The notes under the pieces were generated by a model. The model was not told the origin of the DNA. It saw nothing but the letters and a program-made list of their open reading frames with translations, and did not search any database. The translations under genes and the position numbers were made by a program. Positions 18,333 through 63,960 of a DNA stretch of 64,000 nucleotides are shown here, piece by piece (the first letter of the stretch is position 1; every line of letters starts with the position of its first letter). The DNA is from Macrostomum lignano (lineage: Eukaryota), in assembly GCA_002269645.1 (NCBI GenBank), contig NIVC01003829.1, positions 10,853 through 74,852 on the forward strand, given 5' to 3'.

Positions 18333-23211
<4,879 letters not shown>

Positions 23212-37877: not shown

Positions 37878-38830
37878 GTACCCTTTCCTGGAAGGGGTTT
37901 CAAAAAAACAGGAGAAAAATCCTTTCCACAGAAATCTTTGTTGTTAAAACGAGGTGCCGTAAAACTCGGCGCGGATCAGTTCCGAAGAACTCTGCCGCAT
38001 TACATTTTTATTAAAAGGTGAATTTACAAGTGAATTCGATTCAGATATTGAACGTATATTGTAGTAAAATTTTAATGAATCCGTAAAACTATTTTTAAAT
38101 ATTTGGCATTTTTCGTCGCCAAAAAAGAAGCGAGGCGAAAAATGCCTCACAGAGAAGGGATCCGATAAAAAGAGGAAATCTAAAATATTGCGTGCTGGAA
38201 TATTTTAAGTCCTGTTGAAGGTAAAAAGAGGCTATTGAGTAAAAGAATGTTATGGCGTGTATTTATATTTAGCTATAATTGAATAGGTAGTATAGAGGGG
38301 TGTAAAGAGTATTTATCAAAGTTTATAAAAAGAAGTTAGATAAAAACAGTTGGAATCCGGTCTCCAGGCTCGGTGTAGAAGTTCACCAACACGGAGTTGA
38401 ACTTCGGGACATCGAACTGGGTATCATGGTAAATGAAGTCACGAATGTCTTCAATTACCGGATGCCAGTTTAGATTTTCCTTCAGCTCAACCCCGCTGTA
38501 GGTGTACGACGGGCCGATCCAGTAGACGCGGCGCTGCTCACTCGGACGATGCTGAAAGGCTTGAGGCAGCAGGTCGGTGATCAGGCGCTCGTAGACTTGG
38601 TCCGCGACCTCGCTCAGGAACTTGGGCGCGTAGATTATCGCACTGTCGCTGGCGTAGATCGTCTGAGCTTTAAGAGCTTTAAGGGTCAGCACCCAGGAGT
38701 CCACACAAAGTGCGCTCACTGACGACTTAAAATAAAATCATGGGGGGTGGGGCGGCCTAGAGATAAGCAATTTACAAGTGGAATAAACAGAGTCAGCTAT
38801 GTAGTTTAAGATAAACTAATATTGACTTTC
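37878..38830 (-). mobile_element. Unit 0: internally deleted derivative of the AlkB-LINE unit (5' flank, N-half of AlkB, diverged 3' flank)
   Basis: 38354-38662 encodes TIYASDS...NSVLVNFYTEPGDRIP, nearly identical to copy A. It is fused at CAGTTGG/AATCC to a diverged homologue of the AT-rich 3' flank (37880-38353). Confidence 0.8.
38354..38662 (-). pseudogene. Truncated AlkB-domain fragment that stops just before the HxD motif
   Basis: Translation matches the AlkB N-half of copies A and B up to PGDRIP. WHSD and everything downstream are missing. Confidence 0.85.
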
Positions 38831-39416
38831 GTAAAACACAAAATCGGTAAAATCATGAGGTAACACTCATGACGTAATCTTGACGTAAATCGAAGTAAAC
38901 ACACCGGAAACACTCTGCTCAGTTAATCACTGACTTCAAGTATCTTGATTTTCACAAATCAGGGATTCTCGGAAATCTTTGTTACGCGAATTGATATTAA
39001 TATGATCGAATATATACAATTTCACTATTTAAAAGCAGTATTTATGCACGCATTTGGGGATAAAAAAGAGGGGAGGGAAATCCCGCACAAAGAAGGGATC
39101 TAATAAAAGCAGGACATCTAAAAAATACGTGCTTGATATTTGAAGGCCTATTGAGAGTAAAAGCAAGACATTTAAGTAAAAAAATAGAGATTAAAAATGC
39201 AATAGCGCATATTTGAATTTAGTTGTAAAAATAGAATGAATATAGTAAAGGTGTAAAAAAGCAATTAGTGATATTTGTAGAGCAGTTGGGTAAAAAACAC
39301 AGTTGGGAAAATTGTAAAAAGAAACGCGAGGAGACATAGAGATTACCTAATCAGTCCTAATGACTGATCAACCGATCTCTGTCTCAGGCAGCAAGTTTAG
39401 TTTTATTAGTTGCGTT

Positions 39417-42238
39417 TCAGAGCGTGGTCACTTCCGGTTTGGGAGGCTGGTGCCCGGCCTTACCCTGGGGTGGGATTCCCCTGTTTCTTTCCCGACGCCT
39501 CATGGCATCCCAGAGGACATTGAGGACTGGGGTTCGGCCCGGAGCCCGAGGGGCTTCCGGCTCAATGTGGAAGCTGTGGAGCTTGGCTGCCCTCATCTTG
39601 AGCAGCCAAGCCACCCCAGCTGCTTGACCCTGTCTGCGAGCATCGGCATACCTGCCAGCTTGTGCAGGTATTCGATGCTGATGTAGGATGGCACACCATA
39701 GCAGATACGGAGAGCCAGGTTTTGGATTTTCTGCAATTTGATTTGGTTAGTCGCACAAATTTGGCTCAGGATTGGCGCTCCGTAGGTGAGAGCGCTTTCT
39801 CCGTATGCCCTGTACAGCATTCTGAGGGTGGTGCTACTCAGCTTAGTCATTTTTGCAATTCTGCACAGTGACATTACAATGGCTCTGCTGGTATCTGCCA
39901 TGTTGTCCACATGTTTGTTCAGGCAGAGGCTCTGGTCAAGGAGGACACCCAGGAATTTCACCTCCTGACAGTACGGAACCTCAGTGTCCCCCAGATACAG
40001 TTTGGGTCGCAAGTCCATGCGCCTAGTGGGTTTGTAGTTGAAAGCGATTGCTTTGCTTTTACCGGCATTCAGTCTAATGCCTTGTTTACCGCACCAGTCA
40101 AAGACTCGTCTGAGGTAGCTTTGAAGGGATGTTCGGAGCCCCGCAAAGGTGTCTGCTGAGGCCCAGACGGCCATGTCGTCTGCGAATTGACTGCGTTTGA
40201 CGCTTGAGATGGTGGGAGTCGGCATTGAGCTGACGAAGAGGAGATACAGGAGAGGACTCAGAATGCCTCCCTGAGGGACGCCAGCCTGGATGGTGTGGGG
40301 ATCGCTTAGGGCCCCCTCGATTCGAACCTGGATCTGTCTGTCTCGCAGGTAGTCAGACAGGATTCGCATGAGCATAGGTGGAAAACCATCGGTGAGCATG
40401 CTATGCCTGATCTTGTCGTGCCAGGTGGAGTCAAAAGCTGCCTCTGCATCCAGGAAGACTGCAGCGGACTTTTTAGCTTTGCACTTTGCTACCATGACAT
40501 CTTGTGCCAGACGGCACAGGTTGTCATACGTGGAGTGAATTTTGCGGTAGGCGCATTGGTCATCTCCTAGGGTCTTATTATCCTCAAGGTGCTTGGTGAG
40601 TCTTTTTGCTATAAGCTTCTCAAACACTTTGCCCAGACATGAGGTCAGGCTGATTGGTCTGTAGGAGTTGGGGTGTTCGGGCGGTTTGTCCGGCTTGGGG
40701 ATCATTGTCACCACAGCTTTCTTCCAGGCGCTGGGGAAAATCCCTCGACCGTAGCAGGCGTTGAAGAGGTTAGTGAGTCTCGTGATTGCCACCCCCTCTA
40801 AGCCCAGCTTGAGGACGCAGTTGGGAATCTTGTCCAGCCCGGGTGCTCCATCAGGCCTGAGGTGCTCCAGTTCCCACACTGTGTCTGCCACAGAGAATGC
40901 AGCATCAAGTGGGTGGGTCTCAATGGGTTCGATTCCCTCAGGAACGGGGTAGAATGAGGTGAGCTGTGCCACATCGGCCACCTCACGTTTGAGCTGTTCG
41001 CATGTGGAAGGGACTGGGCGCATCTTTGAGTCCAGAGTCTCGGCTAGAAGGTTAGCCTTCTCCAGATCTGTGTGCGCAGTTGTTTGACCCAGGGTGAGGC
41101 TGGGGATCGAGGTTGGCTTAAATTTGCCCATCAGCTTTTTAGTGTCATGCCAGAAATTCTTCACTTTCTTGTTCTTGCTGTTTTCAACAATACTCTCACA
41201 GACTTTGGTTAGCTTTCCATTCTGGAAGGAGTTAATTTCTCTCTTTATGCGATTTGCGAGCTGGTTTGCTTGGGTTTTGAAATTTTGATCCCGTGTGCTG
41301 AAGAAGAGGCGTCTGAGTCGTCTGCGCTCTTTGATCAGGTCGAGGATGTACTTGGGTAGGGCGTTTTTGGCACCACAGTCTGGTACTGTGGAGTCAATCA
41401 CGGTGTGAATGGCCTTTGTGATGTGATCCACTTCGGCATTGATTTGGTCAGCATTTGATAATTTAATATTCTGATCTGAGCTCAAAGCTTCACTGATTTT
41501 GAGTCTGAACTCGTCCCAGTTTGTTTTTGAGAAGTTTTTGGGTCTGGGGGGACCAGCCCATTTCTTCGACTGAATATTGAGCGTGAGGATTATGGGTAAG
41601 TGGTCACTGCCCAGGTCAGGACCCACCTCAAAGTCCTGCACAAATGGGAGAAAGTCCTCAGTGGCCAGGGCGAGGTCCAAGACATTCCTAGAAATCAGCC
41701 CGTTTTTGGTGGCCAGTCTGGTGAACTGACCGGCTTGATTGAGAATGGTTGGCGAGGTGGGGCCCTCAGACAGCCAGTCGTGCAGCTGGTAGCCAGCCAT
41801 GTTGTTGCTGCTGTCACCCCCGAGGAAGCGGTGTCTGGCATTGAGGTCACCCATGAGCACACTGCGCCTACGGGAGAGAAGATTTTTGAGTAGGTTCAGG
41901 TTCAGATGATACGGTGCTGGAGACCTGTACACCAGAGCAAGAATGAAGTCAGGACCAGAGTTGTCAGACAAGCTCACGGTGCAAGAGATGGCTTCATGGT
42001 TGACATTGTCATACTGCAAGCGCACACTTGTGAGTTTGACGCGAGGAGAGTGGGCAAGGAGAAGCCCGCGTTTGACTTGCGGGGTATCATACCGAATGAT
42101 GGAGTACCCGGGAATCTGGACAGTGTGACAACTTTTGAGAATGGTCTCAGAGAAGAGGGCAATGTCTAGCTCCTGACTGACGACCCACTGTGTCAGCTCT
42201 CTGATTTTCGGGTTGAATCCCCTGCAGTTTAAATGCAT
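39417..42238 (-). CDS. LINE ORF2: APE endonuclease and reverse transcriptase (about 940 aa; frameshift near 39615), no RNase H
   Basis: APE: HLNCRG, LFSET, MGDLNARH, LDLAL, GSDHLPI. RT: PGLDKI, SYRPISLTS, AVFLDAEAAFD, GVPQGGILSPLLY, QFADD, VKFLGV. The C-terminal LQKIQNLALRICYGVP is Jockey-like. The track ORF (881 aa) is cut by a C-run indel; copies A and C both end KPEVTTL. Confidence 0.93.
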
Positions 42239-42324
42239 AATCTTCAGGGCTGTGGTTTGATTGTTTGAGTCTACAGTTAACGCACTGAAGTTTCAATTCA
42301 AGTCTTGAGTTTAGCTGCCTGAGA

Positions 42325-44493
42325 CTAGGACTCAGTGGTCATGCCAGCCATGCCCGGCACTTCCTGGAGTGCAGCCCGCACAATGTCCTCAACCATTTTA
42401 CTGGTTGATTCCACAGTGAGGACCTCCCCAGGCGGTCGGGACAGGGCCTGCACAACCACTTGAGTCAGAGAGCGGGTGATCAGGGGCAACAGCATGCTCA
42501 CCACCGACATAAAGTCACTAAGCTGCAGCTGCACCGCCTGGCCGGCATCAGCTGACGGAGCAGTCGCATTGACATCAGACTCGGTCTCTGCCGCCGGAGC
42601 GCTCCTGGCATCATCGGTCACGATGACAAGCGGCCGGATCGCGGCGGGTACCGGCACCGTGCGCCTGCCTCGGCGGATCAGCCAGCCGCTGTCGGAGTCG
42701 TCGTCGGCGGCGGCGTCGTCGGTCTCACTTGACACTGGGGCAGCAGCGGCCGCAGCTTCCGCAGCTCGCGCCGCGGCTTTGGCCTCAGCAGCCGCTCTGG
42801 TCGCCTTGTCGTGCTCCGCCTTGGCGACGGTGCAGGCTCGACTGGTGGTTCGGTGCGAGCCGCCGCAGTTGGCGCAGACCGCTGGGCCCTCGTGCTGGCA
42901 CTCCTTCCAGGAATGCTGGCCGCCGCAAATCCGGCAGCGCTGCTGCCCCCGACACTGAGCAGCGCGGTGGCCGAACTCCTGGCAGCGCTGGCATTGCAGA
43001 GCGCGGACCGGCTCGTCTGTGCGGCTGTCCTCGCAGTTGAACTTCAAGAAGTCGGTGCAGATGCCATCGCGGAGGCACTTCTCGTAGGTCATCGCCGACT
43101 TTGTGAAGATGCGCACGAACTGGGTTGCCTTTCCAGTCGCTCTGGCTCGGATTCTGTGGACGCTGACAATGTCCAGCTTGAGCGTGCCGCGCAACAGGGT
43201 CGCGAAGTCAGCCTCCGAGAATGCGAGGGGCACCTCAGTAGCGACGAAGGTGCGTACCGGCTGCTGCTGCACTCTGTCGGGCCCTGTTCTGTTGTCCAGC
43301 GGTCGGGCTCGGGCTGGACGGCGCTTTACGGGATGCTCGAGCAGCTTCTCCTCGCGCAGCGCGCCGCCCAGGAAGACGTTGTAGTCCCGCTCCGACGCTG
43401 GGAACACGAGATAGGCCGGCTGATTCGCCATCGGCGCAGTGTTGACGGCTCTAGCTTCGCCGGCAAAGTTGGTCTGCAGCCAGGCAACGAACTGCATCAG
43501 CTTGTTGGCCGCGTCCCGGTGCACCTCAAAAACGATCGGCGGGATGGCAGCCTGGGGCCTTCTGGGCGGCGCAGGGCGCGCCGCAACCTGCGCGTAGGGC
43601 CGCGCTGCCGCAGCCGCCTGCGCGCTTGTCGCCGAAGCCGCCGCCGCACCGGCCGGCCATGAAGCCGCCGAAGCCGCCGCCGCACCGGACGCCGCGCCGC
43701 GACCTCCTCGCCTGCCTCGCTGGTGGCCGCCACGGCCGCGCCGACCCCGATCGCTTTCGCGGTCTCGCGTCGCCGTCGCCTGCCGCTCCTGGGGCCTGTC
43801 GTCGCCCCGGCCGCCCTGGTCGTCGTCGTGGCCGCCTTGGTCGTCGTCCCGACCGCCTTGGTCGTCGCCGAATGGGCCGCCGTTGAGCGGCTGGCTGTAG
43901 GTCGGATCATCCGGCAGAGCTCGCTTGCGCCGCAGCTCCGGCTTGGTGACACGGAATGTTAGCGAGATGCGGACGCCATTCTGAGAGTGGGCGGCGGGCA
44001 CCTGGTGCTGCAGGCGTTTCTGGCAGTTTCCTGCCATCAGAATCAGCGAGCCTGGCAGCGTTGGAAAGCGGTGCGTCACGTTGCCGTCCCGACGGCGCAG
44101 CATGAACAGCCGCTCAGCGCCGAAGGACACGGTCGCGATCGTCGGCCTGTCGCCGAGCTCATCCTCATCGTCCGAGTGCCAGGGAATCCGGTCTCCCGGC
44201 TCGGTGTAGAAGTTCACCAACACGGAGTTGAACTTCGGGACATCGAACTGGGTATCATGGTAAATGAAGTCACGAATGTCTTCAATTACCTGATGCCAGT
44301 TTAGATTTTCCTTCAGCTCAACCCCGCTGTAGGTGTACGACGGGCCGATCCAGTAGACGCGGCGCTGCTCACTCGGACGATGCTGAAAGGCTTGAGGCAG
44401 CAGGTCGGTGATCAGACGCTCGTAGACTTGGTCCGCGACCTCGCTCAGAAACTTGGGCGCGTAGATTATCGTACTGTCGCTGGCGTAGATCGT
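42325..44493 (-). CDS. LINE ORF1: AlkB-family 2OG-Fe(II) dioxygenase domain (43951-44493), RGG-rich linker and gag-like domain with three CCHC knuckles; N-terminus missing
   Basis: AlkB motifs: NSVLVNFY, WHSDDE, ATVSFG..R.F, GSLILM, QHQVP, RISLTFR. Knuckles: CQRCQEFGHRAAQC, CRICGGQHSWKEC, CANCGGSHRTTSRAC. An in-frame TAG sits immediately before the AlkB start. Confidence 0.9.
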   Translation of the reverse strand, partial: TIYASDSTIIYAPKFLSEVADQVYERLITDLLPQAFQHRPSEQRRVYWIGPSYTYSGVELKENLNWHQVIEDIRDFIYHDTQFDVPKFNSVLVNFYTEPGDRIPWHSDDEDELGDRPTIATVSFGAERLFMLRRRDGNVTHRFPTLPGSLILMAGNCQKRLQHQVPAAHSQNGVRISLTFRVTKPELRRKRALPDDPTYSQPLNGGPFGDDQGGRDDDQGGHDDDQGGRGDDRPQERQATATRDRESDRGRRGRGGHQRGRRGGRGAASGAAAASAASWPAGAAAASATSAQAAAAARPYAQVAARPAPPRRPQAAIPPIVFEVHRDAANKLMQFVAWLQTNFAGEARAVNTAPMANQPAYLVFPASERDYNVFLGGALREEKLLEHPVKRRPARARPLDNRTGPDRVQQQPVRTFVATEVPLAFSEADFATLLRGTLKLDIVSVHRIRARATGKATQFVRIFTKSAMTYEKCLRDGICTDFLKFNCEDSRTDEPVRALQCQRCQEFGHRAAQCRGQQRCRICGGQHSWKECQHEGPAVCANCGGSHRTTSRACTVAKAEHDKATRAAAEAKAAARAAEAAAAAAPVSSETDDAAADDDSDSGWLIRRGRRTVPVPAAIRPLVIVTDDARSAPAAETESDVNATAPSADAGQAVQLQLSDFMSVVSMLLPLITRSLTQVVVQALSRPPGEVLTVESTSKMVEDIVRAALQEVPGMAGMTTES

Positions 44494-44599
44494 CTAAGGG
44501 TTGGGGCGACTACAAGATAAAATCTTGGGGGATGGGGCGGCCTGGGGAGAGATAAGCAATGTACAGTGGAATAAACAGAGTTAGCTATGAAGTTTAAGA

Positions 44600-45485
44600 T
44601 AGAACCAACATTAGAAATTATAAATTGCTCTCTCTAGAGCGTTATGGACATTCATTCAGGCATACAAACCTTAGAGATTTAGTATATTTAGATTTAAGAT
44701 AGAACCAACATTAGAAATTATAAATTGCTCTCTCTAGAGCGTTATGGACATTCATTCAGGCATACAAACCTTAGAACTTTAGTATATTTAGACTAGAGCG
44801 TTATGGACATTCAAGCAAGCAAGCATACAAACCTTAGAGATTTAGTATATTTAGATTTAAGATAGAACCAACATTAGAAATTATAAATTGCTCTCTCTAG
44901 AGCGTTATGGACATTCATTCGGCATACAAACCTTAGAGATTTAGTATATTTAGATTTAGAAGACTAGCTAATTAGAGCTGGCTGCCAGCAGCCAGAATAA
45001 TTTTTTTATTGCCCCCCTTTAAGTGGAGCGGAGTGAGTTTTCTTATCAGTTGGCTCTGGCGCAATCAATTAAAATCGGCAGTGGTTTCTGGCTGATAAAA
45101 TTTGCATTGAAAAAGGCCATTTAAAACAGTTTTTCGATCCCTTTAATCCCTTTAATCCCTATTTAATCCCTTTAGCATTGAAGCAGATACAAGAAATTTT
45201 AACTGTCTTCTTTCCAGACAATTTTGAATCTTTTGGCGAAAACGCGATCAAAATCGGTGAAGAATTGCTCTCTCTAGAGCGTTATGGACATTCATTCAAG
45301 CAAGCATACAAACAAACCTTAGAGATTTAGTATATTTAGATTAGAAGATTTTAACTGTCTTCTTTCCAGACAATTTTGAATCTTTTGGCGAAAACGCGAT
45401 GAAAATCGGTGAAGAATTGCAGTCTCTAGAGCGTTATGGACAAGCAAGCATACAAATATTAGAGATTTAGTATATTTAGACTAGC
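44600..45485. repeat. Cluster of DINE-1/HINE-like (non-autonomous Helitron/Helentron-like) repeat modules, block 1
   Basis: Repeated core TTTCCAGACAATTTTGAATCTTTTGGCGAAAACGCGATCAAAATCGGTGAAGAATTGC..CTAGAGCGTTATGGACA followed by CATACAAAC..TTAGAGATTTAGTATATTTAGA tails. The repetition is directly visible; the family assignment is by resemblance only. Confidence 0.55.
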
Positions 45486-51705: not shown

Positions 51706-52454
51706 GTACCTTTTCTTGGAAGTAATTCCTTTCGAATCGAAGTAATCTCACCATGGAAATTATTGTTAAAATGAGGTACACTGCTGCGTTAGAGTAATTA
51801 CTTTTGACTTCATTAGTACCCCTTCTTGGAAGGGGTTTCACAAATCAGGGAACACTCATTGAATGTTCCTCTCCACGGAAATCTTTGTTGTTAAAACGAG
51901 GTGCCGTCGAAACCGGCGCGGGTCAGTTCCGAAGAACTCTGCTGCAGTTATATTTTGTATTTGATCGAAAGAATTAAAAATATTTACAAGATTTCGATTT
52001 GAATATTTATACGAATATTGAAATTAAAAATATACATATATAAAACTATTTTTCAATATTTTGCAGTATTTTGCACGCATTTGGGGATAAAAAAGAGGGG
52101 AGGGAAATCCCGCACAAAGAAGGGATCTAATAAAAGCAGGACATCTAAAAAATACGTGCTTGATATTTGAAGGCCTATTGAGAGTAAAAGCAAGACATTT
52201 AAGTAAAAAAATAGAGATTAAGAATGCAATAGCGCATATTTGAATTTAGTTGTAAAAATAGAATGAATATAGTAAAGGTGTAAAAAAGCAATTAGTGATA
52301 TTTGTAGAGCAGTTGGGTAAAAAACACAGTTGGGAAAATTGTAAAAAGAAACGCGAGGAGACATAGAGATTACCTAATCAGTCCTAATGACTGATCAACC
52401 GATCTCTGTCTCAGGCAGCAAGTTTAGTTTTATTAGTTGCGTTTCAGAGCGTGG

Positions 52455-55262
52455 TCACTTCCGGTTTGGGAGGCTGGTGCCCGGCCTTACCCTGGGTGGG
52501 ATTCCCCTGTTTCTTTCCCGACGCCTCATGGCATCCCAGAGGACATTGAGGACTGGGGTTCGGCCCGGAGCCCGAGGGGCTTCCGGCTCAATGTGGAAGC
52601 TGTGGAGCTTGGCTGCCCTCATCTTGAGCAGCCAAGCCACCCCCAGCTGCTTGACCCTGTCTGCGAGCATCGGCATACCTGCCAGCTTGTGCAGGTATTC
52701 GATGCTGATGTAGGATGGCACACCATAGCAGATACGGAGAGCCAGGTTTTGGATTTTCTGCAATTTGATTTGGTTAGTCGCACAAATTTGGCTCAGGATT
52801 GGCGCTCCGTAGGTGAGAGCGCTTTCTCCGTATGCCCTGTACAGCATTCTGAGGGTGGTGCTACTCAGCTTAGTCATTTTTGCAATTCTGCACAGTGACA
52901 TTACAATGGCTCTGCTGGTATCTGCCATGTTGTCCACATGTTTGTTCAGGCAGAGGCTCTGGTCAAGGAGGACACCCAGGAATTTCACCTCCTGACAGTA
53001 CGGAACCTCAGTGTCCCCCAGATACAGTTTGGGTCGCAAGTCCATGCGCCTAGTGGGTTTGTAGTTGAAAGCGATTGCTTTGCTTTTACCGGCATTCAGT
53101 CTAATGCCTTGTTTACCGCACCAGTCAAAGACTCGTCTGAGGTAGCTTTGAAGGGATGTTCGGAGCCCCGCAAAGGTGTCTGCTGAGGCCCAGACGGCCA
53201 TGTCGTCTGCGAATTGACTGCGTTTGACGCTTGAGATGGTGGGAGTCGGCATTGAGCTGACGAAGAGGAGATACAGGAGAGGACTCAGAATGCCTCCCTG
53301 AGGGACGCCAGCCTGGATGGTGTGGGGATCGCTTAGGGCCCCCTCGATTCGAACCTGGATCTGTCTGTCTCGCAGGTAGTCAGACAGGATTCGCATGAGC
53401 ATAGGTGGAAAACCATCGGTGAGCATGCTATGCCTGATCTTGTCGTGCCAGGTGGAGTCAAAAGCTGCCTCTGCATCCAGGAAGACTGCAGCGGACTTTT
53501 TAGCTTTGCACTTTGCTACCATGACATCTTGTGCCAGACGGCACAGGTTGTCATACGTGGAGTGAATTTTGCGGTAGGCGCATTGGTCATGTCCTAGGGT
53601 CTTATTATCCTCAAGGTGCTTGGTGAGTCTTTTTGCTATAAGCTTCTCAAACACTTTGCCCAGACATGAGGTCAGGCTGATTGGTCTGTAGGAGTTGGGG
53701 TGTTCGGGCGGTTTGTCCGGCTTGGGGATCATTGTCACCACAGCTTTCTTCCAGGCGCTGGGGAAAATCCCTCGACCGTAGCAGGCGTTGAAGAGGTTAG
53801 TGAGTCTCGTGATTGCCACCCCCTCTAAGCCCAGCTTGAGGACGCAGTTGGGAATCTTGTCCAGCCCGGGTGCTCCATCAGGCCTGAGGTGCTCCAGTTC
53901 CCACACTGTGTCTGCCACAGAGAATGCAGCATCAAGTGGGTGGGTCTCAATGGGTTCGATTCCCTCAGGAACGGGGTAGAATGAGGTGAGCTGTGCCACA
54001 TCGGCCACCTCACGTTTGAGCTGTTCGCATGTGGAAGGGACTGGGCGCATCTTTGAGTCCAGAGTCTCGGCTAGAAGGTTAGCCTTCTCCAGATCTGTGT
54101 GCGCAGTTGTTTGACCCAGGGTGAGGCTGGGGATCGAGGTTGGCTTAAATTTGCCCATCAGCTTTTTAGTGTCATGCCAGAAATTCTTCACTTTCTTGTT
54201 CTTGCTGTTTTCAACAATACTCTCACAGACTTTGGTTAGCTTTCCATTCTGGAAGGAGTTAATTTCTCTCTTTATGCGATTTGCGAGCTGGTTTGCTTGG
54301 GTTTTGAAATTTTGATCCCGTGTGCTGAAGAAGAGGCGTCTGAGTCGTCTGCGCTCTTTGATCAGGTCGAGGATGTACTTGGGTAGGGCGTTTTTGGCAC
54401 CACAGTCTGGTACTGTGGAGTCAATCACGGTGTGAATGGCCTTTGTGATGTGATCCACTTCGGCATTGATTTGGTCAGCATTTGATAATTTAATATTCTG
54501 ATCTGAGCTCAAAGCTTCACTGATTTTGAGTCTGAACTCGTCCCAGTTTGTTTTTGAGAAGTTTTTGGGTCTGGGGGGACCAGCCCATTTCTTCGACTGA
54601 ATATTGAGCGTGAGGATTATGGTAAGTGGTCACTGCCCAGGTCAGGACCCACCTCAAAGTCCTGCACAAATGGGAGAAAGTCCTCAGTGGCCAGGGCGAG
54701 GTCCAAGACATTCCTAGAAATCAGCCCGTTTTTGGTGGCCAGTCTGGTGAACTGACCGGCTTGATTGAGAATGGTGGCGAGGTGGGGCCCTCAGACAGCC
54801 AGTCGTGCAGCTGGTAGCCAGCCATGTTGTTGCTGCTGTCACCCCCGAGGAAGCGGTGTCTGGCATTGAGGTCACCCATGAGCACACTGCGCCTACGGAG
54901 AGAAGATTTTTGAGTAGGTTCAGGTTCAGATGATACGGTGCTGGAGACCTGTACACCAGAGCAAGAATGAAGTCAGGACCAGAGTTGTCAGACAAGCTCA
55001 CGGTGCAAGAGATGGCTTCATGGTTGACATTGTCATACTGCAAGCGCACATTTGTGAGTTTGACGCGAGGAGAGTGGGCAAGGAGAAGCCCGCGTTTGAC
55101 TTGCGGGGTATCATACCGAATGATGGAGTACCCGGGAATCTGGACAGTGTGACAACTTTTGAGAATGGTCTCAGAGAAGAGGGCAATGTCTAGCTCCTGA
55201 CTGACGACCCACTGTGTCAGCTCTCTGATTTTCGGGTTGAATCCCCTGCAGTTTAAATGCAT
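52455..55262 (-). CDS. Copy B ORF2 (APE-RT), several single-base frameshifts
   Basis: Track ORFs 54714-55262, 54517-54711 and 52455-54512 are pieces of the same protein as copy A ORF2; the DNA is near-identical by eye. Confidence 0.9.
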
Positions 55263-55348
55263 AATCTTCAGGGCTGTGGTTTGATTGTTTGAGTCTACAG
55301 TTAACGCACTGAAGTTTCAATTCAAGTCTTGAGTTTAGCTGCCTGAGA

Positions 55349-58052
55349 CTAGGACTCAGTGGTCATGCCAGCCATGCCCGGCACTTCCTGGAGTGCAGCC
55401 CGCACAATGTCCTCAACCATTTTACTGGTTGATTCCACAGTGAGGACCTCCCCAGGCGGTCGGGACAGGGCCTGCACAACCACTTGAGTCAGAGAGCGGG
55501 TGATCAGGGGCAACAGCATGCTCACCACCGACATAAAGTCACTAAGCTGCAGCTGCACCGCCTGGCCGGCATCAGCTGACGGAGCAGTCGCATTGACATC
55601 AGACTCGGTCTCTGCCGCCGGAGCGCTCCTGGCATCATCGGTCACGATGACAAGCGGCCGGATCGCGGCGGGTACCGGCACCGTGCGCCTGCCTCGGCGG
55701 ATCAGCCAGCCGCTGTCGGAGTCGTCGTCGGCGGCGGCGTCGTCGGTCTCACTTGACACTGGGGCAGCAGCGGCCGCAGCTTCCGCAGCTCGCGCCGCGG
55801 CTTTGGCCTCAGCAGCCGCTCTGGTCGCCTTGTCGTGCTCCGCCTTGGCGACGGTGCAGGCTCGACTGGTGGTTCGGTGCGAGCCGCCGCAGTTGGCGCA
55901 GACCGCTGGGCCCTCGTGCTGGCACTCCTTCCAGGAATGCTGGCCGCCGCAAATCCGGCAGCGCTGCTGCCCCGACACTGAGCAGCGCGGTGGCCGAACT
56001 CCTGGCAGCGCTGGCATTGCAGAGCGCGGACCGGCTCGTCTGTGCGGCTGTCCTCGCAGTTGAACTTCAAGAAGTCGGTGCAGATGCCATCGCGGAGGCA
56101 CTTCTCGTAGGTCATCGCCGACTTTGTGAAGATGCGCACGAACTGGGTTGCCTTCCCAGTCGCTCTGGCTCGGATTCTGTGGACGCTGACAATGTCCAGC
56201 TTGAGCGTGCCGCGCAACAGGGTCGCGAAGTCAGCCTCCGAGAATGCGAGGGGCACCTCAGTAGCGACAAAGGTGCGTACCGGCTGCTGCTGCACTCTGT
56301 CGGGCCCTGTTCTGTTGTCCAGCGGTCGGGCTCGGGCTGGACGGCGCTTTACGGGATGCTCGAGCAGCTTCTCCTCGCGCAGCGCGCCGCCCAGGAAGAC
56401 GTTGTAGTCCCGCTCCGACGCTGGGAACACGAGATAGGCCGGCTGATTCGCCATCGGCGCAGTGTTGACGGCTCTAGCTTCGCCGGCAAAGTTGGTCTGC
56501 AGCCAGGCAACGAACTGCATCAGCTTGTTGGCCGCGTCCCGGTGCACCTCAAAAACGATCGGCGGGATGGCAGCCTGGGGCCTTCTGGGTGGCGCAGGGC
56601 GCGCCGCAACCTGCGCGTAGGGCCGCGCTGCCGCAGCCGCCTGCGCGCTTGTCGCCGAAGCCGCCGCCGCACCGGCCGGCCAGGAAGCCGCCGAAGCCGC
56701 CGCCGCACCGGACGCCGCGCCGCGACCTCCTCGCCTGCCTCGCTGGTGGCCGCCACGGCCGCGCCGACCCCGATCGCCTTCGCGGTCTCGCCTCGCCGTC
56801 GCCTGCCGCTCCTGGGGCCTGTCGTCGCCCCGGCCGCCCTGGTCGTCGTCGTGGCCGCCTTGGTCGTCGTCCCGACCGCCTTGGTCGTCGCCGAATGGGC
56901 CGCCGTTTAGCGGCTGGCTGTAGGTCGGGTCATCCGGCAGAGCTCGCTTGCGCCGCAGCTCCGGCTTGGTGACACGGAATGTTAGCGAGATGCGGACGCC
57001 ATTCTGAGAGTGGGCGGCGGGCACCTGGTGCTGCAGGCGTTTCTGGCAGTTTCCTGCCATCAGAATCAGCGAGCCTGGCAGCGTTGGAAAGCGGTGCGTC
57101 ACGTTGCCGTCCCGACGGCGCAGCATGAACAGCCGCTCAGCACCGAAGGACACGGTCGCGATCGTCGGCCTGTCGCCGAGCTCATCCTCATCGTCCGAGT
57201 GCCAGGGAATCCGGTCTCCCGGCTCGGTGTAGAAGTTCACCAACACGGAGTTGAACTTCGGGACATCGAACTGGGTATCATGGTAAATGAAGTCACGAAT
57301 GTCTTCAATTACCTGATGCCAGTTTAGATTTTCCTTCAGCTCAACCCCGCTGTAGGTGTACGACGGGCCGATCCAGTAGACGCGGCGCTGCTCACTCGGA
57401 CGATGCTGAAAGGCTTGAGGCAGCAGGTCGGTGATCAGGCGCTCGTAGACTTGGTCCGCGACCTCGCTCAGGAACTTGGGCGCATAGATGATGGTGCTGT
57501 CGCTAGCGTAGATCGTCTGCTGACAGTCAGTCAAGTCAGGCTCATCAGGGAAGATGATTTGACTGATGTCAGCGTCCAGTTGCTCGGCAGGGGGCTTTGG
57601 CAGCGTCGAGGCCTGGTCTGCAGCCGATTGCTGGCGCTCCTCAGACGTCGGCGCTGCCGCTGCCGCACTGAGCTCGCTGGACTCGGCAGTTGGTGGCTCG
57701 GTGGTTGCTGCGGCCTCGTTGGATGGCAGGGCGCTTGTCTGGCCTGGCTCGTCGCAGTCGAGAGACATGCGCTGCTCTGCCTCTGCGCCTGCAGCCTCCG
57801 GCAGCTGCTCATTCTCTCGCAGGATCTCCTCTGCGTTGCGCAAGAGCTCGCCGGCCGGGGGCTGATCGAGTGGCGGCCTTCCAGACTGCGTCGAGCTCGC
57901 ATCTGGCCTGCTGGCGGCGGGCTCGCAGTCGATGGCTCAGCTGTCGGCGTCAGTCCAAGAAGCTGGCGACCGTAGGCTTCGTTCGGACGATACCGGTGCT
58001 CGAGAGAGGGCCGGCAGTCCATCTTTTTAGCGCTGGCGCGATTCGCAGCCAT
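55349..58052 (-). CDS. Copy B ORF1, full length (about 901 aa after two 1-nt corrections): disordered N-terminus, AlkB domain (56974-57516), RGG linker, gag/CCHC x3
   Basis: ATG at 58052 (MAANRASAKK). The missing base at about 57860 is present in copy C, and the missing base at about 55972 is present in copy A. 2704+2 nt = 902 codons. Confidence 0.9.
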
Positions 58053-58894
58053 ATGGCGTGATTATTTGGGTGCACTCACACTAAACTAAACTAGACAACT
58101 ACTAATGAGTCAGGAGGCACGCAAAGTGCGCTCGCTGAGAGGGGTGGGGCGACTGCAAGATAAGACTAGGGGTGGGGTAGAGATAAAAACAAATGTACAG
58201 TGGAATGGAAGGCTAACTAAAGTACTTTTTAAGAGCTAAGCTAGGCTAGTCTAAACTATTCTATTTCTAATAAGCCTTTCTAGGAAAGGCCTGCAAAAAC
58301 TAGAGAATTCTCCTAAGAGTATCCCTCCACGGAAATCTTTGTTAAAAACGAGGTGCCGTCGAAACCGGCGCGGGTCAGTTCCGAAGAACTCTGCCGCAGT
58401 TATATTTTGTATTTGATCGAAAGAATTAAAAATATTTACAAGATTTCGATTTGAATATTTGTACGAATATTGAAATAAAAATATACATATATAAAACTAT
58501 TTTTCAATATTTTGCAGTATTTTGCACGCATTTGGGGATAAAAAAGAGGGGAGGGGAATCCCACACAAAGAAGGGATCTAATAAAAACAGGACATCTAAA
58601 AAATACGTGCTTGATATTTGAAGGCCTATTGAGAGTAAAAGCAAGACATTTAAGTAAAAAAATAGAGATTAAGAATGCAATAGCGCATATTTGAATTTAG
58701 TTGTAAAAATAGAATGAATATAGTAAAGGTGTAAAAAAGCAATTAGTGATATTTGTAGAGCAGTTGGGTAAAAAACACAGTTGGGAAAATTGTAAAAAGA
58801 AACGCGAGGAGACATAGAGATTACCTAATCAGTCCTAATGACTGATCAACCGATCTCTGTCTCAGGCAGCAAGTTTAGTTTTATTAGTTGCGTT

Positions 58895-61539
58895 TCAGAG
58901 CGTGGTCACTTCCGGTTTGGAAGGCTGGTAGCCAGGCCTAACCCTGGGTGGGAATCCCCTGTTTCTTTCCCGACGCCTCATGGCATCCCAGAGGACATTG
59001 AGGACTGGGGTTCGGCCCGGAGCCCGAGGGGCTTCCGGCTCAATGTGGAAGCTGTGGAGCTTGGCTGCCCTCATCTTGAGCAGCCAAGCCACCCCCAGCT
59101 GCTTGACCCTGTCTGCGAGCATCGGCATACCTGCCAGCTTGTGCAGGTATTCAATGCTGATGTAGGATGGCACACCATAGCAGATACGGAGAGCCAGGTT
59201 TTGAATTTTCTGCAATTTGATTTGGTTAGTCGCACAGATTTGGCTCAGGATTGGCGCTCCGTAGGTGAGAGCGCTTTCTCCGTATGCCCTGTACAGCATT
59301 CTGAGGGTGGTGCTACTCAGCTTAGTCATTTTTGCAATTCTGCACAGTGACATTACAATGGCTCTGCTGGTATCTGCCATGTTGTCCACATGTTTGTTCA
59401 GGCAGAGGCTCTGGTCAAGGAGGACACCCAGGAATTTCACCTCCTGACAGTACGGAACCTCAGTGTCCCCCAGATACAGTTTGGGTCGCAAGTCCATGCG
59501 CCTAGTGGGTTTGTAGTTGAAAGCGATTGCTTTGCTTTTACCGGCATTCAGTCTAATGCCTTGTTTACCGCACCAGTCAAAGACTCGTCTGAGGTAGCTT
59601 TGAAGGGATGTTCGGAGCCCCGCAAAGGTGTCTGCTGAGGCCCAGACGGCCATGTCGTCTGCGAATTGACTGCGTTTGACGCTTGAGATGGTGGGAGTCG
59701 GCATTGAGCTGACGAAGAGGAGGTACAGGAGAGGGCTCAGAATGCCTCCCTGAGGGACGCCAGCCTGGATGGTGTGGGGATCGCTTAGGGCCCCCTCGAT
59801 TCGAACCTGGATCTGTCTGTCTCGCAGGTAGTCAGACAGGATTCGCATGAGCATAGGTGGAAAACCATCGGTGAGCATGCTATGCCTGATCTTGTCGTGC
59901 CAGGTGGAGTCAAAAGCTGCCTCTGCATCCAGGAAGACTGCAGCGGACTTTTTAGCTTTGCACTTTGCTACCATGACATCTTGTGCCAGACGGCACAGGT
60001 TGTCATACGTGGAGTGAATTTTGCGGTAGGCGCATTGGTCATCTCCTAGGGTCTTATTATCCTCAAGGTGCTTGGTGAGTCTTTTTGCTATAAGCTTCTC
60101 AAACACTTTGCCCAGACATGAGGTCAGGCTGATTGGTCTGTAGGAGTTGGGGTGTTCGGGCGGTTTGTCCGGCTTGGGGATCATTGTCACCACAGCTTTC
60201 TTCCAGGCGCTGGGGAAAATCCCTCGACCGTAGCAGGCGTTGAAGAGGTTAGTGAGTCTCGTGATTGCCACCCCTCTAAGCCCAGCTTGAGGACGCAGTT
60301 GGGAATCTTGTCCAGCCCGGGTGCTCCATCAGGCCTGAGGTGCTCCAGTTCCCACACTGTGTCTGCCACAGAGAATGCAGCATCAAGTGGGTGGGTCTCG
60401 ATGGGTTCGATTCCCTCAGGAACGGGGTAGAATGAGGTGAGCTGTGCCACCTCGGCCACCTCACGTTTGAGCTGTTCGCATGTGGAAGGGACTGGGCGCA
60501 TCTTTGAGTCCAGAGTCTCGGCTAGAAGGTTAGCCTTCTCCAGATCTGTGTGCGCAGTTGTTTGACCCAGGGTGAGGCTGGGGATGGAGGTTGGCTTAAA
60601 TTTGCCCATCAGCTTTTTAGTGTCTAGTAGCTCTTTGATCAGGTCGAGGATGTACTTGGGTAGGGCGTTTTTGGCACCACAGTCTGGTACTGTGGAGTCA
60701 ATCACGGTGTGAATGGCCTTTGTGATGTGATCCACTTCGGCATTGATTTGGTCAGCATTTGATAATTTAATATTCTGATCTGAGCTCAAAGCTTCACTGA
60801 TTTTGAGTCTGAACTCGTCCCAGTTTGTTTTTGAGAAGTTTTTGGGTCTGGGGGACCAGCCCATTTCTTCGACTGAATATTGAGCGTGAGGATTATAGGT
60901 AAGTGGTCACTGCCCAGGTCAGGACCCACCTCAAAGTCCTGCACAAATGGAGAAAGTCCTCAGTGGCCAGGGCGAGGTCCAAGACATTCCTAGAAATCAG
61001 CCCGTTTTTGGTGGCCAGTCTGGTGAACTGACCGGCTTGATTGAGAATGGTGGGCGAGGTGGGGCCCTCAGACAGCCAGTCGTGCAGCTGGTAGCCAGCC
61101 ATGTTGTTGCTGCTGTCACCCCGAGGAAGCGGTGTCTGGCATTGAGGTCACCCATGAGCACACTGCGCCTACGAGAGAGAAGATTTTTGAGTAGGTTCAG
61201 GTTCAGATGGTACGGTGCTGGAGACCTGTACACCAGAGCGAGATTGAAGTCAGGACCAGAGTTGTCAGACAAGCTCACGGTGCAAGAGATGGCTTCATGG
61301 TTGACATTGTCATACTGCAAGCGCACATTTGTGAGTTTGACGCGAGGAGAGTGGGCAAGGAGAAGCCCGCGTTTGACTTGCGGGGTATCATACCGAATGA
61401 TGGAGTACCCGGGAATCTGGACAGTGTGACAACTTTTGAGAATGGTCTCAGAAAAGAGGGCAATGTCTAGCTCCTGACTGACGACCCACTGTGTCAGCTC
61501 TCTGATTTTCGGGTTGAATCCCCTGCAGTTTAAATGCAT
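58895..61539 (-). pseudogene. Copy C ORF2 (APE-RT), frameshifted and internally deleted
   Basis: Track ORFs 60997-61539, 60893-61102, 60187-60864 and 58895-60271 match copy A ORF2. The segment RRRLRR...KNFWH is absent. Confidence 0.9.
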
Positions 61540-61625
61540 AATCTTCAGGGCTGTGGTTTGATTGTTTGAGTCTACAGTTAACGCACTGAAGTTTCAATTC
61601 AAGTCTTGAGTTTAGCTGCCTGAGA

Positions 61626-62535
61626 CTAGGACTCAGTGGTCATGCCAGCCATGCCGGCACTTCCTGGAGTGCAGCCCGCACAATGTCCTCAACCATTTTA
61701 CTGGTTGATTCCACAGTGAGGACCTCCCAGGCGGTCGGGACAGGGCCTGCACAACCACTTGAGTCAGAGAGCGGGTGATCAGGGCAACAGCATGCTCACC
61801 ACCGACATAAAGTCACTAAGCTGCAGCTGCACGATGTAGGTGTACGACGGCCGATCCAGTAGACACGGCGCTGCTCACTCGGACGATGCTGAAAGGCCAG
61901 AGGCAGCAGGTCGGTGATCAGGCGCTCGTAGACTTGGTCCGCGACCTCGCTCAGGAACTTGGGCGCATAGATGATGGTGCTGTCGCTAGCGTAGATCGTC
62001 TGCTGACAGTCAGTCAAGTCAGGCTCATCAGGGAAGATGATTTGACTGATGTCAGCGTCCAGTTGCTCGGCAGGGGGCTTTGGCAGCGTCGAGGCCTGGT
62101 CTGCAGCCGATTGCTGGCGCTCCTCAGACGTCGGCGCTGCCGCTGCCGCACTGAGCTCGCTGGACTCGGCAGTTGGTGGCTCGTGGTTGCTGCGGCCTCG
62201 TTGGATGGCAGGGCGCTTGTCTGGCCTGGCTCGTCGCAGTCGAGAGACATGCGCTGCTCTGCCTCTGCGCCTGCAGCCTCCGGCAGCTGCTCATTCTCTC
62301 GCAGGATCTCCTCTGCGTTGCGCAAGAGCTCGCCGGCCGGTGGGCTGATCGAGTGGCGGCCTTCCAGACTGCGTCGAGCTCGCATCAGGCCTGCTGGCGG
62401 CGGGCTCGCAGTCGATGGCTCAGCTGTCGGCGTCAGTCCAAGAAGCTGGCGACCGTAGGCTTCGTTCGGACGATACCGGTGCTCGAGAGAGGGCCGGCAG
62501 TCCATCTTTTTAGCGCTGGCGCGATTTGCAGCCAT
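61626..62535 (-). pseudogene. Copy C ORF1 remnant (N-terminus and AlkB N-part joined to the C-terminal tail)
   Basis: MAANRASAKK...TIYASDS...RRVYWIG, then a jump to QLQLSDFMSV...MTTES. Confidence 0.88.
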
Positions 62536-63113
62536 ATGGCGTGATTATTTGGGTACACTCAAACTAAACCTAAACTACAACTAACTAATGAGTCAGGAGG
62601 CACACAATTACACAAAGTGCGCTCGCTGAGAGGGGTGGGGCGACTGCAAGATAAGACTAGGGGTGGGGTAGAGATAAAAACAAATGTACAGTGGAATGGA
62701 AGGCTAACTAAAGTACTTTCAAGAGCTAAGCTAGGCTAGTCTAAACTATTCAACTTCCAATAAGCCTTTCTAGGAAAGGCCTGCAAAAACTAGAGAATTC
62801 TCCTTAGAGTATCCCTCCACGGAAATCTTTAGTAAAAGGCGAAAGATTTAATCGTGGAATGAAGAGAAACCAGAGTTGAAGTTAAACAAGAGTGGGTAGC
62901 TTTTCTTATGTAGAAAATTCTGTAACCGCTTTAATTAAACATTCGTTTTCATAAAGCATTCGTTCCTGGCATGCCAATCTCTCTACTGACATAAGTGGAA
63001 CTATTTGCGCATGAAAGCTAGTTTTTGTCTAGGCCTACGCAAACTGTTTTTTTCTATGCTGTAGAGAGTGGGAAGGATAGGCAGTAAAATTTCGGTAATT
63101 TTTTTAAACTTCA

Positions 63114-63960
63114 TAGTAAGTCTTTTCTGAAGTAGCCACTGGTTAGCGAGGGTGATGACCTCTCTTTGGACTCGAAGCGGTGCCCACGGAGTGGCCGCTT
63201 GAGCTGACGGAATAGATGAAAATCGGAGGGTGCCAGGTCTGGTGAATAGGCCGGATGTGGGAGGATTTCGAACCCCGCAGTGGTGGCAGCATTCACCGCA
63301 ACCTGGGCAGTGTGAGCTGAGGCATTGTCGTGAAGCAGCAAGGGGGCCAGCACTCAGCTTCCCCGCTTCTTCTGGACCACTGCCTGACGAAACCGGCCAG
63401 CTGTTCGGAGGACCAGACACTGTGACAGTGTGCCTAACAGACAGTGACAGTGAGCAGATCCCCTGACAGTCCCAGAAAAACAGCCCTGGAATCTCGCTCA
63501 GACACGGGGTCCATAGTGGCAGATCCAGCACTCATCCCCAGTAATGATTCATCGCTCAAATCCATCCAGGTTCTCATTGTAGGGGTCAGGCAGTAGTCCG
63601 ACGAGAAAGCATTCGGGCGCTACTGCCTCAACTTTTATGGCTCACCCTCACGCTTGAATTCGTTGTAAAGTCGCTCGATGGTGCCAGAGAGGGACAAGTT
63701 GTGGGGTACAGACTTTATCTCTCTCTCAATTGCAAAATTTAATATGAGGGCTCGGTATTTCTGCTTGTGTGTGCATTTTGCGAAAAATTCAGGGGGTGCT
63801 TAAAGTTCGTGCAGAAAAGATACAGTTAAAAAGACATGAAAAGAAAACACTGCACCCTATAAATTCTATATAAAAGTACTTTAAAAAGCCGAAAAAAATT
63901 ATGAAAAAAAGCTTTTGAAATGGCTGAACGGCAAAACTATAGATTTGAAGCACCCTCGTA
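63114..63960 (-). mobile_element. Degenerate mariner (DD34D) DNA transposon remnant
   Basis: IITGDE(C)W at about 63525-63550. LLHDNA...YSPDLAPSDF has exactly 34 residues between the second and third Asp. A candidate 5' TIR TA|CGAGGGTGCTTCAAA ends at 63960; no matching left TIR was found. Confidence 0.85.

What the first reader, a model, noticed from the sequence alone, without database searches (positions are those of the whole stretch)
55349..58052. LINE ORF1 that fuses an AlkB-type demethylase domain to a gag-like zinc-knuckle protein
Seen: one reading frame, continuous in copy A and restorable in copy B, joins a 181-aa AlkB/2OG-Fe(II) domain to a Jockey/I-type ORF1p with three CCHC knuckles, followed by APE-RT ORF2. 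The domain has the Fe-binding HxD (WHSD) and distal His (QHQV), the 2OG-binding RxxxxxR (RISLTFR) and NxY (VNFY). Established: ALKBH2/3-like and plant RNA-virus AlkB domains oxidatively remove m1A/m3C from single-stranded nucleic acids, and ORF1p coats LINE RNA in the RNP. Inference: the element may carry its own RNA or cDNA demethylase into the RNP, either to repair methyl lesions that block RT or to erase host methyl marks. I do not recognise this architecture as standard for Jockey-like elements. I cannot exclude prior reports of AlkB in invertebrate retroelements.
Basis: partly seen in the sequence, partly recalled or inferred. Interest (0 to 1): 0.88.

Follow-up and report, generated by a model that had tools for sequence, protein, structure and literature searches.

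The report
Flatworm LINE whose ORF1 carries AlkB
A young jumping gene (LINE) of the flatworm Macrostomum lignano, and a whole lineage of its relatives, builds an ALKBH3-type nucleic-acid demethylase into the RNA-binding protein that coats its own RNA. I found no published description of this for LINEs, and it suggests that methyl damage or marks on the RNA limit retrotransposition.

Summary
On the minus strand, 58052-55349 is ORF1 of a 6.5-kb LINE (copy B). It reads: disordered N-terminus, complete AlkB domain (PF13532, 1.8e-21), RGG-rich linker, two predicted RRMs, three CCHC knuckles. An APE+RT ORF2 follows. Copy B needs two 1-bp corrections. Copy A (44493-42325) is open through AlkB to the stop codon. 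By sequence and predicted fold the domain is ALKBH3/ALKBH2-type, not ALKBH5/FTO-type, and all Fe(II) and 2OG residues are present.

It is not a one-off capture. All three further copies I examined in the Macrostomum lignano assembly carry AlkB. At least five diverged families have the same fusion, and their ORF2s are 37-60% identical to each other against 31% or less to the nearest LINEs, whose ORF1 lacks AlkB.

AlkB is under purifying selection: copies A and B differ by 9 synonymous and 0 non-synonymous changes in it (p=2.5e-6).

The most likely role is demethylation of RT-blocking m1A/m3C on the element's own RNA or cDNA inside the RNP. This is inferred, not tested.

My full-text searches found no report of AlkB in a LINE. 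The nearest precedents are an orchid Gypsy ALKBH5-like ORF and, from my own knowledge, AlkB domains in plant RNA viruses. I rate it a new variant of a known kind.

The parts
51867..58347 (-). Copy B: full-length LINE, 6.48 kb, holding the finding.
   Evidence: blastn self-comparison. It is 99.1% identical over its full length to copies in M. lignano contigs NIVC01002030 and NIVC01002892.
58053..58347 (-). 5' UTR of copy B. It begins with AAAGATTTCCGTGGAG, which also follows the 3' end of each copy.
55349..58052 (-). ORF1 of copy B (901 codons once restored). It has two 1-bp deletions, at 57859/57860 and 55974/55975.
57517..58052 (-). N-terminal low-complexity region of ORF1 (about 179 aa).
   Evidence: Translation. 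It is in frame in P0306 and P0155.
56962..57516 (-). AlkB (2OG-Fe(II) dioxygenase) domain, ALKBH3/2-type. NxY at 57229-57240; WHSD at 57193-57204; LQHQV at 57022-57036; RISLTFR at 56974-56994.
   Evidence: PF13532 E=1.8e-21. PDB ALKBH3 E=4e-24. AF2 pLDDT 88, Foldseek ALKBH3 E=3.6e-18, TM 0.80. Motif coordinates.
56569..56961 (-). Acidic then RGG-rich, Ala-rich linker. It is not conserved in sequence between families.
   Evidence: dN/dS about 0.9; 26% identity to L001
56050..56559 (-). Two predicted RRM domains of the ORF1 core (about 56338-56559 and 56050-56277).
   Evidence: AF2 pLDDT 88.8. All top Foldseek hits are tandem-RRM proteins.
55856..56016 (-). Three CCHC zinc knuckles (55975-56016, 55922-55960, 55856-55900). 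The frameshift lies between the first and the second.
   Evidence: the cysteines and histidines are invariant or nearly so in alignment A2
52455..55262 (-). ORF2 of copy B: APE endonuclease plus reverse transcriptase, no RNase H hit. The frame is broken between 54512 and 54714.
51867..52454 (-). 3' UTR of copy B. It ends ...CGTTTTAACAAC with no poly(A).
39035..44495 (-). Copy A, 99.5% identical to B. The ORF1 frame is open from 44493 to 42325 (AlkB through to the stop). ORF2 at 39593-42238 is 881 aa. A different sequence lies 5' of 44495.
58322..62837 (-). Copy C, head-to-tail with B. It has internal deletions that remove the AlkB C-terminal half and the ORF1 body (equivalent to 55558-57348), plus 180 bp of ORF2.
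38352..38665 (-). Fragment F: the N-terminal half of AlkB only. Its 5' junction is the same as in copy A.

Best explanation
This is a recently active APE-type LINE of Macrostomum lignano. It belongs to a distinct LINE lineage whose ORF1 protein is a fusion of five parts: a disordered N-terminus, a complete ALKBH3-like Fe(II)/2-oxoglutarate dioxygenase, an RGG-rich linker, two RRMs, and three CCHC knuckles.

Shown:
- the architecture;
- its conservation across diverged families;
- intact catalytic residues;
- purifying selection on the AlkB part.

Inferred:
- ORF1p binds the RNA that encoded it, so the tethered enzyme sits at high local concentration on the element's single-stranded RNA and on the nascent first-strand cDNA.
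- There it oxidatively removes N1-methyladenine and N3-methylcytosine. These Watson-Crick-face lesions or marks form mainly in single-stranded nucleic acid and stall reverse transcriptases.
- The result would be more full-length, less mutated insertions.
For: Architecture and domain type:
- Domains and frames.
- ALKBH3 is the best solved relative (4e-24), ahead of ALKBH2 (2e-15).
- The predicted fold (pLDDT 88) matches ALKBH3 and ALKBH2 at TM 0.80-0.82, against 0.58-0.66 for ALKBH5.
- NxY, HxD, the distal His and RxxxxxR are conserved in every transposon-borne homologue whose sequence covers them.
- The ORF1 core is predicted as tandem RRMs followed by knuckles.

Selection:
- A versus B in ORF1: 14 synonymous and 2 non-synonymous changes (p=2.8e-7).
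- A versus B in AlkB alone: 9 synonymous and 0 non-synonymous (p=2.5e-6).
- Window versus L001: AlkB dN/dS about 0.26 and 62% identity, the best-conserved ORF1 segment.
- L004 versus L008 shows the same pattern.

Lineage-wide feature:
- L001, L004 and L006 each have an AlkB-ORF1 next to an APE/RT ORF2.
- P0156-P0159 are intact 757-962 aa fusions, and P0161/P0308 is a second M. lignano family.
- ORF2s of AlkB-bearing LINEs are 37-60% identical to each other and 31% or less to the next group.
- In that next group, ORF1 lacks AlkB in L011, L012 and L013.
- All three extra M. lignano copies contain AlkB.

Established knowledge (my own): ALKBH3 demethylates m1A and m3C in ssDNA and RNA. AlkB treatment is routinely used to remove RT blocks in tRNA sequencing. 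Plant flexivirus AlkB domains repair RNA.
Against: - No biochemical or genetic test of activity or substrate was possible.
- No copy in the window has both ORFs intact.
- The element's expression is unknown.
- ALKBH2/3-type enzymes also act on DNA, so the real substrate could be DNA rather than RNA.
- The AlkB phylogeny is unresolved (bootstrap 12/100 for monophyly of the transposon-borne AlkBs). A single origin therefore rests on the ORF2 similarity gap and the shared domain order.
- Synonymous sites between families are saturated, so those dN/dS values are rough.
Confidence: 0.55

Rival explanations
1. Epitranscriptomic counter-defence. The domain erases regulatory methyl marks that the host deposits on LINE RNA (m6A, or m1A acting as a mark). 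The transcript thereby escapes reader-mediated decay, sequestration or chromatin silencing, as proposed for the orchid Gypsy ALKBH5-like protein.
For: - Precedent in LTR elements: an ALKBH5-like ORF with in vitro m6A demethylase activity (PMC9289625).
- A host ALKBH9B promotes Onsen mobilisation (PMC10686560, listed).
- m6A affects L1 (PMC7873242).
- The conservation and selection evidence applies equally here.
Against: - The domain is ALKBH3/2-type, not ALKBH5/FTO-type. m6A is not the canonical substrate of that subgroup.
- m1A as a regulated mark would fall between this explanation and the best one.
Confidence: 0.2
2. Non-catalytic module. The AlkB fold is kept as an extra single-strand nucleic-acid-binding or oligomerisation domain of ORF1p, with no need for turnover.
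For: - ORF1 proteins are modular and exchange RNA-binding domains (PMC4120745, listed).
- Purifying selection alone does not prove catalysis.
Against: - Every Fe(II) and 2OG ligand is conserved across families that share only about 35-40% identity. A purely binding role would not require that.
Confidence: 0.1
3. DNA-level or host-benefit role. The enzyme repairs 3mC/1mA in genomic DNA, for example off-target products of DNMTs at methylated transposon loci. Alternatively the copies supply the host with ALKBH activity.
For: - M. lignano is reported to retain DNMT1/3 and ALKB2, and DNMTs generate 3mC (PMC9246332).
- Structural similarity to ALKBH2 is as high as to ALKBH3 (TM 0.82).
Against: - By sequence the domain is closer to ALKBH3, the single-strand-preferring enzyme.
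- The loop corresponding to the ALKBH2 finger is shorter and lacks the FGK motif (my reading).
- Fusion to an RNA-coating protein and retention across a transposon lineage argue for a cis benefit to the element.
- M. lignano has other AlkB genes (P0266, P0184).
Confidence: 0.08
4. Artefact or one-off event. This would be a chimeric gene model, an assembly error, or a single recent capture of a host ALKBH exon by one copy.
For: - The window copies carry frameshifts.
- The assembly is PacBio-based and highly duplicated (PMC5730564).
Against: - The same fusion appears in independent contigs from several sequencing runs.
- A second M. lignano family has it.
- Intact 757-962 aa ORFs exist.
Confidence: 0.02

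Closest known systems
Human ALKBH3 (and ALKBH2), the m1A/m3C oxidative demethylases
   Same: - Same fold and same Fe(II) and 2OG residues.
- About 34-42% identity over 150-190 residues.
- Best sequence and structure match.
   Different: - Here it is a domain inside a retrotransposon ORF1 protein, followed by RRMs and zinc knuckles.
- Activity and substrate are untested.
- Descent from a host ALKBH3 gene is not resolved.
I/Jockey-type LINE ORF1p (RRM plus three CCHC knuckles; 'type I' ORF1 of Khazina and Weichenrieder, from my own knowledge)
   Same: - The C-terminal 400 aa has two predicted RRMs and the CX2CX4HX4C / CX2CX3HX4C / CX2CX3HX6C triplet.
- ORF2 is APE plus RT.
   Different: - It carries an N-terminal AlkB enzyme and an RGG linker.
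- The nearest AlkB-less relatives (L011, L012) have ORF2 only 28-31% identical.
- The survey of Jockey-superfamily ORF1 modules (PMC4120745) did not turn up in any AlkB search.
Orchid Ty3/Gypsy elements with an ALKBH5-like ORF (PMC9289625)
   Same: - A retrotransposon that has fixed an AlkB-family dioxygenase.
- The proposed benefit is through acting on its own RNA.
   Different: - That is an LTR element in plants, with a separate extra ORF.
- It belongs to the ALKBH5 clade and was shown to be an m6A demethylase.
- Here it is a non-LTR element in an animal, fused in frame to ORF1p, and ALKBH3/2-type.
AlkB domains in replicase polyproteins of plant RNA viruses (Flexiviridae and relatives; from my own knowledge, not fetched here)
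   Same: - A selfish RNA replicon carries its own AlkB-type repair enzyme for a single-stranded genome.
   Different: - Those are RNA viruses, with the domain inside the replicase.
- No sequence comparison was made here.
CR1/L2-type LINE ORF1 with an esterase domain
   Same: - Precedent for an enzymatic accessory domain in a LINE ORF1.
   Different: - A different enzyme class that acts on lipids rather than nucleic acid.
- A different LINE group.

Membership tests
AlkB / ALKBH 2OG-Fe(II) dioxygenases (PF13532), ALKBH2/3 subgroup | Profile match above the curated threshold | tested here: met
   77.7 bits against a cut-off of 31.2, E=1.8e-21
AlkB / ALKBH 2OG-Fe(II) dioxygenases (PF13532), ALKBH2/3 subgroup | Fe(II) facial triad HxD...H | tested here: met
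   WHSD and LQHQV align to the ALKBH3 WHSD and QH. They are conserved in all transposon-borne homologues and invariant in alignment A1.
AlkB / ALKBH 2OG-Fe(II) dioxygenases (PF13532), ALKBH2/3 subgroup | 2OG-binding NxY and RxxxxxR | tested here: met
   VNFY and RISLTFR
AlkB / ALKBH 2OG-Fe(II) dioxygenases (PF13532), ALKBH2/3 subgroup | Double-stranded beta-helix fold with the N-terminal nucleotide-recognition part | tested here: met
   AF2 model pLDDT 88, pTM 0.86. Foldseek gives ALKBH3 E=3.6e-18, TM 0.80 over 196 columns, and ALKBH2 TM 0.82.
AlkB / ALKBH 2OG-Fe(II) dioxygenases (PF13532), ALKBH2/3 subgroup | Oxidative demethylation of m1A/m3C | not testable with these tools
   Needs an enzyme assay.
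ALKBH5/FTO-type m6A erasers | Closest similarity to ALKBH5/FTO | tested here: not met
   ALKBH5 gives TM 0.58-0.66 and 16-17% identity, ranked below ALKBH3, ALKBH2, ALKBH6, ALKBH8 and E. coli AlkB. There is no ALKBH5 hit by sequence.
Non-LTR retrotransposon (LINE), APE-type, I/Jockey-like | ORF2 with an APE endonuclease followed by a reverse transcriptase | tested here: met
   Exo_endo_phos_2 2.2e-11 and RVT_1 1.5e-36
Non-LTR retrotransposon (LINE), APE-type, I/Jockey-like | ORF1 with RRM(s) and three CCHC knuckles | tested here: met
   Knuckle spacing read from the sequence. Tandem RRM prediction.
Non-LTR retrotransposon (LINE), APE-type, I/Jockey-like | Dispersed, near-identical copies | tested here: met
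   Four copies or fragments in the window and three more on two other contigs at 99% identity.
Non-LTR retrotransposon (LINE), APE-type, I/Jockey-like | Target-site duplications or a 3' tail typical of target-primed reverse transcription | tested here: inconclusive
   There is no poly(A). Copies lie head-to-tail and share AAAGATTTCCGTGGAG at the junctions.
Non-LTR retrotransposon (LINE), APE-type, I/Jockey-like | RT phylogeny places it in a named clade (Jockey, I, R1 and so on) | not tested
   No reference clade sequences were available. There is no RNase H hit. The only transposon-specific source name among the ORF2 hits is 'transposon X-element' (P0141, 32% identity).

The most novel reading that the evidence does not exclude
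A whole lineage of animal LINEs needs a self-encoded, ORF1p-tethered ALKBH3-type demethylase for efficient retrotransposition, and a Penelope-like element has acquired one as well. This would be the first nucleic-acid repair or eraser enzyme described in non-LTR retroelements. It would imply that m1A/m3C-type methylation of transposon RNA or cDNA, as damage or as host defence, is a real barrier to reverse transcription in vivo.
Probability: 0.35. Interest if true: 0.78.

Novelty: new variant of a known kind. Interest (0 to 1): 0.62.

Why it matters
LINE ORF1 proteins are usually seen as RNA chaperones and packaging proteins. The esterase of CR1/L2-type elements is the only well-known enzymatic ORF1 module.

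A conserved, selected ALKBH3-type enzyme fused to ORF1p gives a testable hypothesis: base methylation of the template limits reverse transcription in cells, and mobile elements evolve their own erasers. This parallels plant RNA viruses and one plant LTR lineage.

M. lignano has transgenesis (PMC5730564), so an HxD mutant can be tested in the native host.

There is also a practical point. Transposon-borne AlkB copies can confound presence/absence calls of ALKBH genes in flatworm genomes, such as the DNMT-ALKB2 co-evolution analyses (PMC9246332).

Tried and rejected
- Full-length composite ORF1 as a query in the word-indexed protein search gave no hit. I think low-complexity words filled the 8000-candidate list. 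The domain-only query and the exhaustive HMMER search worked.
- Exact look-up of the copy A ORF2 found nothing.
- The first homologue list suggested marine bacterial AlkB as nearest relatives. The exhaustive search and NJ tree instead place the transposon-borne domains beside eukaryotic ALKBH3-like sequences, but with negligible bootstrap (12/100 for transposon monophyly). I make no claim about the donor.
- dN/dS between families is limited by saturated synonymous sites. The within-species A versus B comparison is the cleaner test.
None found AlkB in a LINE or a Penelope-like element. Repbase and Dfam could not be consulted.
- The species behind the Logan/ENA contigs (for example SRR24204725, SRR31628392/394/403/434, SRR19430222, ERZ27299524) could not be identified. 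The taxonomic breadth beyond M. lignano is therefore unknown.
Full report
**What is at the coordinates**

The feature lies on the minus strand. A blastn self-comparison shows four copies of one element:
- Copy B (58347->51867) is full length at 6.48 kb and contains the finding.
- Copy A (44495->39035) is 99.5% identical to B. Its homology to B stops at 44495.
- Copy C (62837->58322) lies head-to-tail with B. Internal deletions remove the AlkB C-terminal half and the ORF1 body.
- Fragment F (38665->38352) holds the N-terminal half of AlkB only.

In copy B the stretch 58052->55349 is not a single open frame. It has a 1-bp deletion at 57859/57860 relative to copy C. It has a second 1-bp deletion at 55974/55975, in a G run, relative to copy A.

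Copy A is open for 723 codons, from the first AlkB residue to the ORF1 stop codon. The N-terminus through AlkB into the linker is in frame in other genomic copies (P0306, P0155). A 901-aa ORF1 is therefore well supported.

**Domain content**

- Pfam gives PF13532 (2OG-FeII_Oxy_2) at 77.7 bits, E=1.8e-21. ORF2 has Exo_endo_phos_2 plus RVT_1 and no RNase H hit.
- Against solved structures the best sequence match is human ALKBH3 (4e-24), followed by ALKBH2 (2e-15).
- An AlphaFold model of the domain (pLDDT 88, pTM 0.86) matches ALKBH3 (E=3.6e-18, TM 0.80) and ALKBH2 (TM 0.82). ALKBH5 reaches only TM 0.58-0.66.
- VNFY, WHSD, LQHQV and RISLTFR align with the ALKBH3 2OG and Fe(II) residues.
- After AlkB comes an acidic then RGG-rich linker.
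- The next 260 residues are modelled at pLDDT 88.8 as two beta-alpha-beta-beta-alpha-beta units. All of their top Foldseek hits are tandem-RRM proteins.
- Three knuckles follow, with spacing CX2CX4HX4C, CX2CX3HX4C and CX2CX3HX6C.
- ORF1 is therefore an I/Jockey-type RRM/CCHC protein with an N-terminal AlkB enzyme.

**Host organism**

An exhaustive HMMER search found 99%-identical proteins. The cluster look-up names them as Macrostomum lignano, under accessions PAA54533, PAA54534 and PAA61448. UniProt auto-names them 'Fe2OG dioxygenase domain-containing protein'. Two other contigs of assembly GCA_002269645.1 carry three more copies at 99% identity. All three contain AlkB, and one has an intact 944-aa ORF2.

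**Not a one-off capture**

- ORF2 relatives led to L001 (ORF2 57% identical). Its upstream ORF1 carries AlkB (3.5e-20) and the knuckles.
- The HMMER search found intact fusions of 757-962 aa (P0156-P0159) and a second M. lignano family (P0161/P0308).
- L004 shows an 843-aa AlkB-ORF1 followed by a 948-aa APE+RT ORF2. L006 shows the same start.
- ORF2s of these elements are 37-60% identical to one another and 31% or less to the next-best LINEs.
- In that next group the ORF1s have knuckles but no AlkB: a complete 402-aa ORF1 in L011, and the ORF1s of L012 and L013.
- AlkB is therefore a lineage-level character. Only nine representatives in 1.84 billion score below 1e-30, so the lineage is narrow in current data.
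- All named members are from M. lignano. The hosts of the Logan/ENA contigs are unknown.

**Selection**

- Copies A and B differ by 16 substitutions in ORF1. Fourteen are synonymous, and both non-synonymous changes fall in the linker (p=2.8e-7).
- Within AlkB the count is 9 synonymous to 0 non-synonymous (p=2.5e-6).
- Between the window family and L001, AlkB is the best-conserved ORF1 segment: 62% identity and dN/dS about 0.26. The linker is at about 0.9.
- L004 versus L008 shows the same ranking.
- The catalytic residues are conserved in every transposon-borne homologue.

**Origin of the domain**

An NJ tree places the transposon-borne AlkBs together, next to eukaryotic ALKBH3-like sequences. 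Bootstrap support is negligible, at 12/100. I make no claim about the donor.

**Mechanism (inferred)**

ORF1p coats the RNA that encoded it. An ALKBH3-type enzyme tethered there would remove m1A and m3C from the single-stranded template or the nascent cDNA. From my own knowledge, these modifications stall reverse transcriptases, and that is why AlkB is used in tRNA sequencing.

The rivals are erasure of regulatory marks, a non-catalytic binding role, and a DNA-level role. The ALKBH3/2 rather than ALKBH5 affinity argues against an m6A eraser like the orchid Gypsy protein (PMC9289625).

**Novelty**

Ten full-text searches found no report of AlkB in a LINE or a Penelope-like element. The precedents are:
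- the orchid Gypsy ALKBH5-like ORF;
- plant RNA-virus AlkB domains (my own knowledge);
- esterase-bearing LINE ORF1s (my own knowledge).

Repbase and Dfam could not be checked. I rate this a new variant of a known kind, with interest 0.62.

Noticed in passing
L007:2120-7398 (Logan SRR19430222): A 1012-aa ORF with an AlkB domain (PF13532, 5e-31) lies directly upstream of an ORF with weak, sub-threshold RT and GIY-YIG Pfam hits. That ORF2 pattern suggests a Penelope-like element. AlkB may therefore have entered a second class of retroelement.
   Followed up: partly
window 58322-58347, 51867-51892, 62812-62837; L014:8706-8727 and 15159-15177; L015:15168-15189: Copies lie head-to-tail. They share AAAGATTTCCGTGGAG at every junction, and there is no poly(A). 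This suggests insertion into the element's own terminal sequence, a specific target, or template switching.
   Followed up: partly
window 44496-44620 and 38666-38790: Copy A and fragment F share a different 5' flank. It joins the AlkB coding sequence at the same base, as ...AG|ACGATCTAC, with an in-frame TAG just before in copy A. The junction looks like a splice acceptor. M. lignano trans-splices 38.8% of its genes (PMC5730564), so an alternative 5' end by splicing is conceivable but untested.
   Followed up: no
window 18333-23073 (-): A second, unrelated LINE with RT plus RNase H. Its upstream ORFs have no AlkB. It is embedded in the 30-bp satellite.
   Followed up: partly
window 10509-37147: A satellite of about 26 kb with a 30-bp unit (AACACACACAAACTCACTGACTACAAGGTA, about 884 copies), interrupted by the RNase H LINE. 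There are other arrays at 426-1421 (60 bp), 1941-3075 (20-21 bp, G-rich) and 8207-8924 (31 bp).
   Followed up: no
window 56719-56769 (and P0160): The linker after AlkB is RGG-rich, which is a possible RNA-binding or condensate motif. A similar RGG tract follows the AlkB remnant in P0160, which comes from another M. lignano family.
   Followed up: no
window 63111-63353 (-) and 7256-8137 (+): A DDE_3 (mariner-type) transposase remnant, and a fragment with a Core-2/I-branching enzyme domain.
   Followed up: no
P0266/P0314 and P0184/P0310-P0312 (M. lignano): M. lignano has other AlkB-domain proteins that may be host ALKBH2/3 genes. The many transposon-borne AlkB copies could inflate or confound ALKBH presence calls in this species.
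   Followed up: partly
window 55974/55975, 57859/57860, 62184: The ORF1 frameshifts are single-base deletions. One is in a G homopolymer, and they sit at different sites in each copy. The assembly is PacBio-based, so some may be assembly errors rather than real mutations.
   Followed up: no
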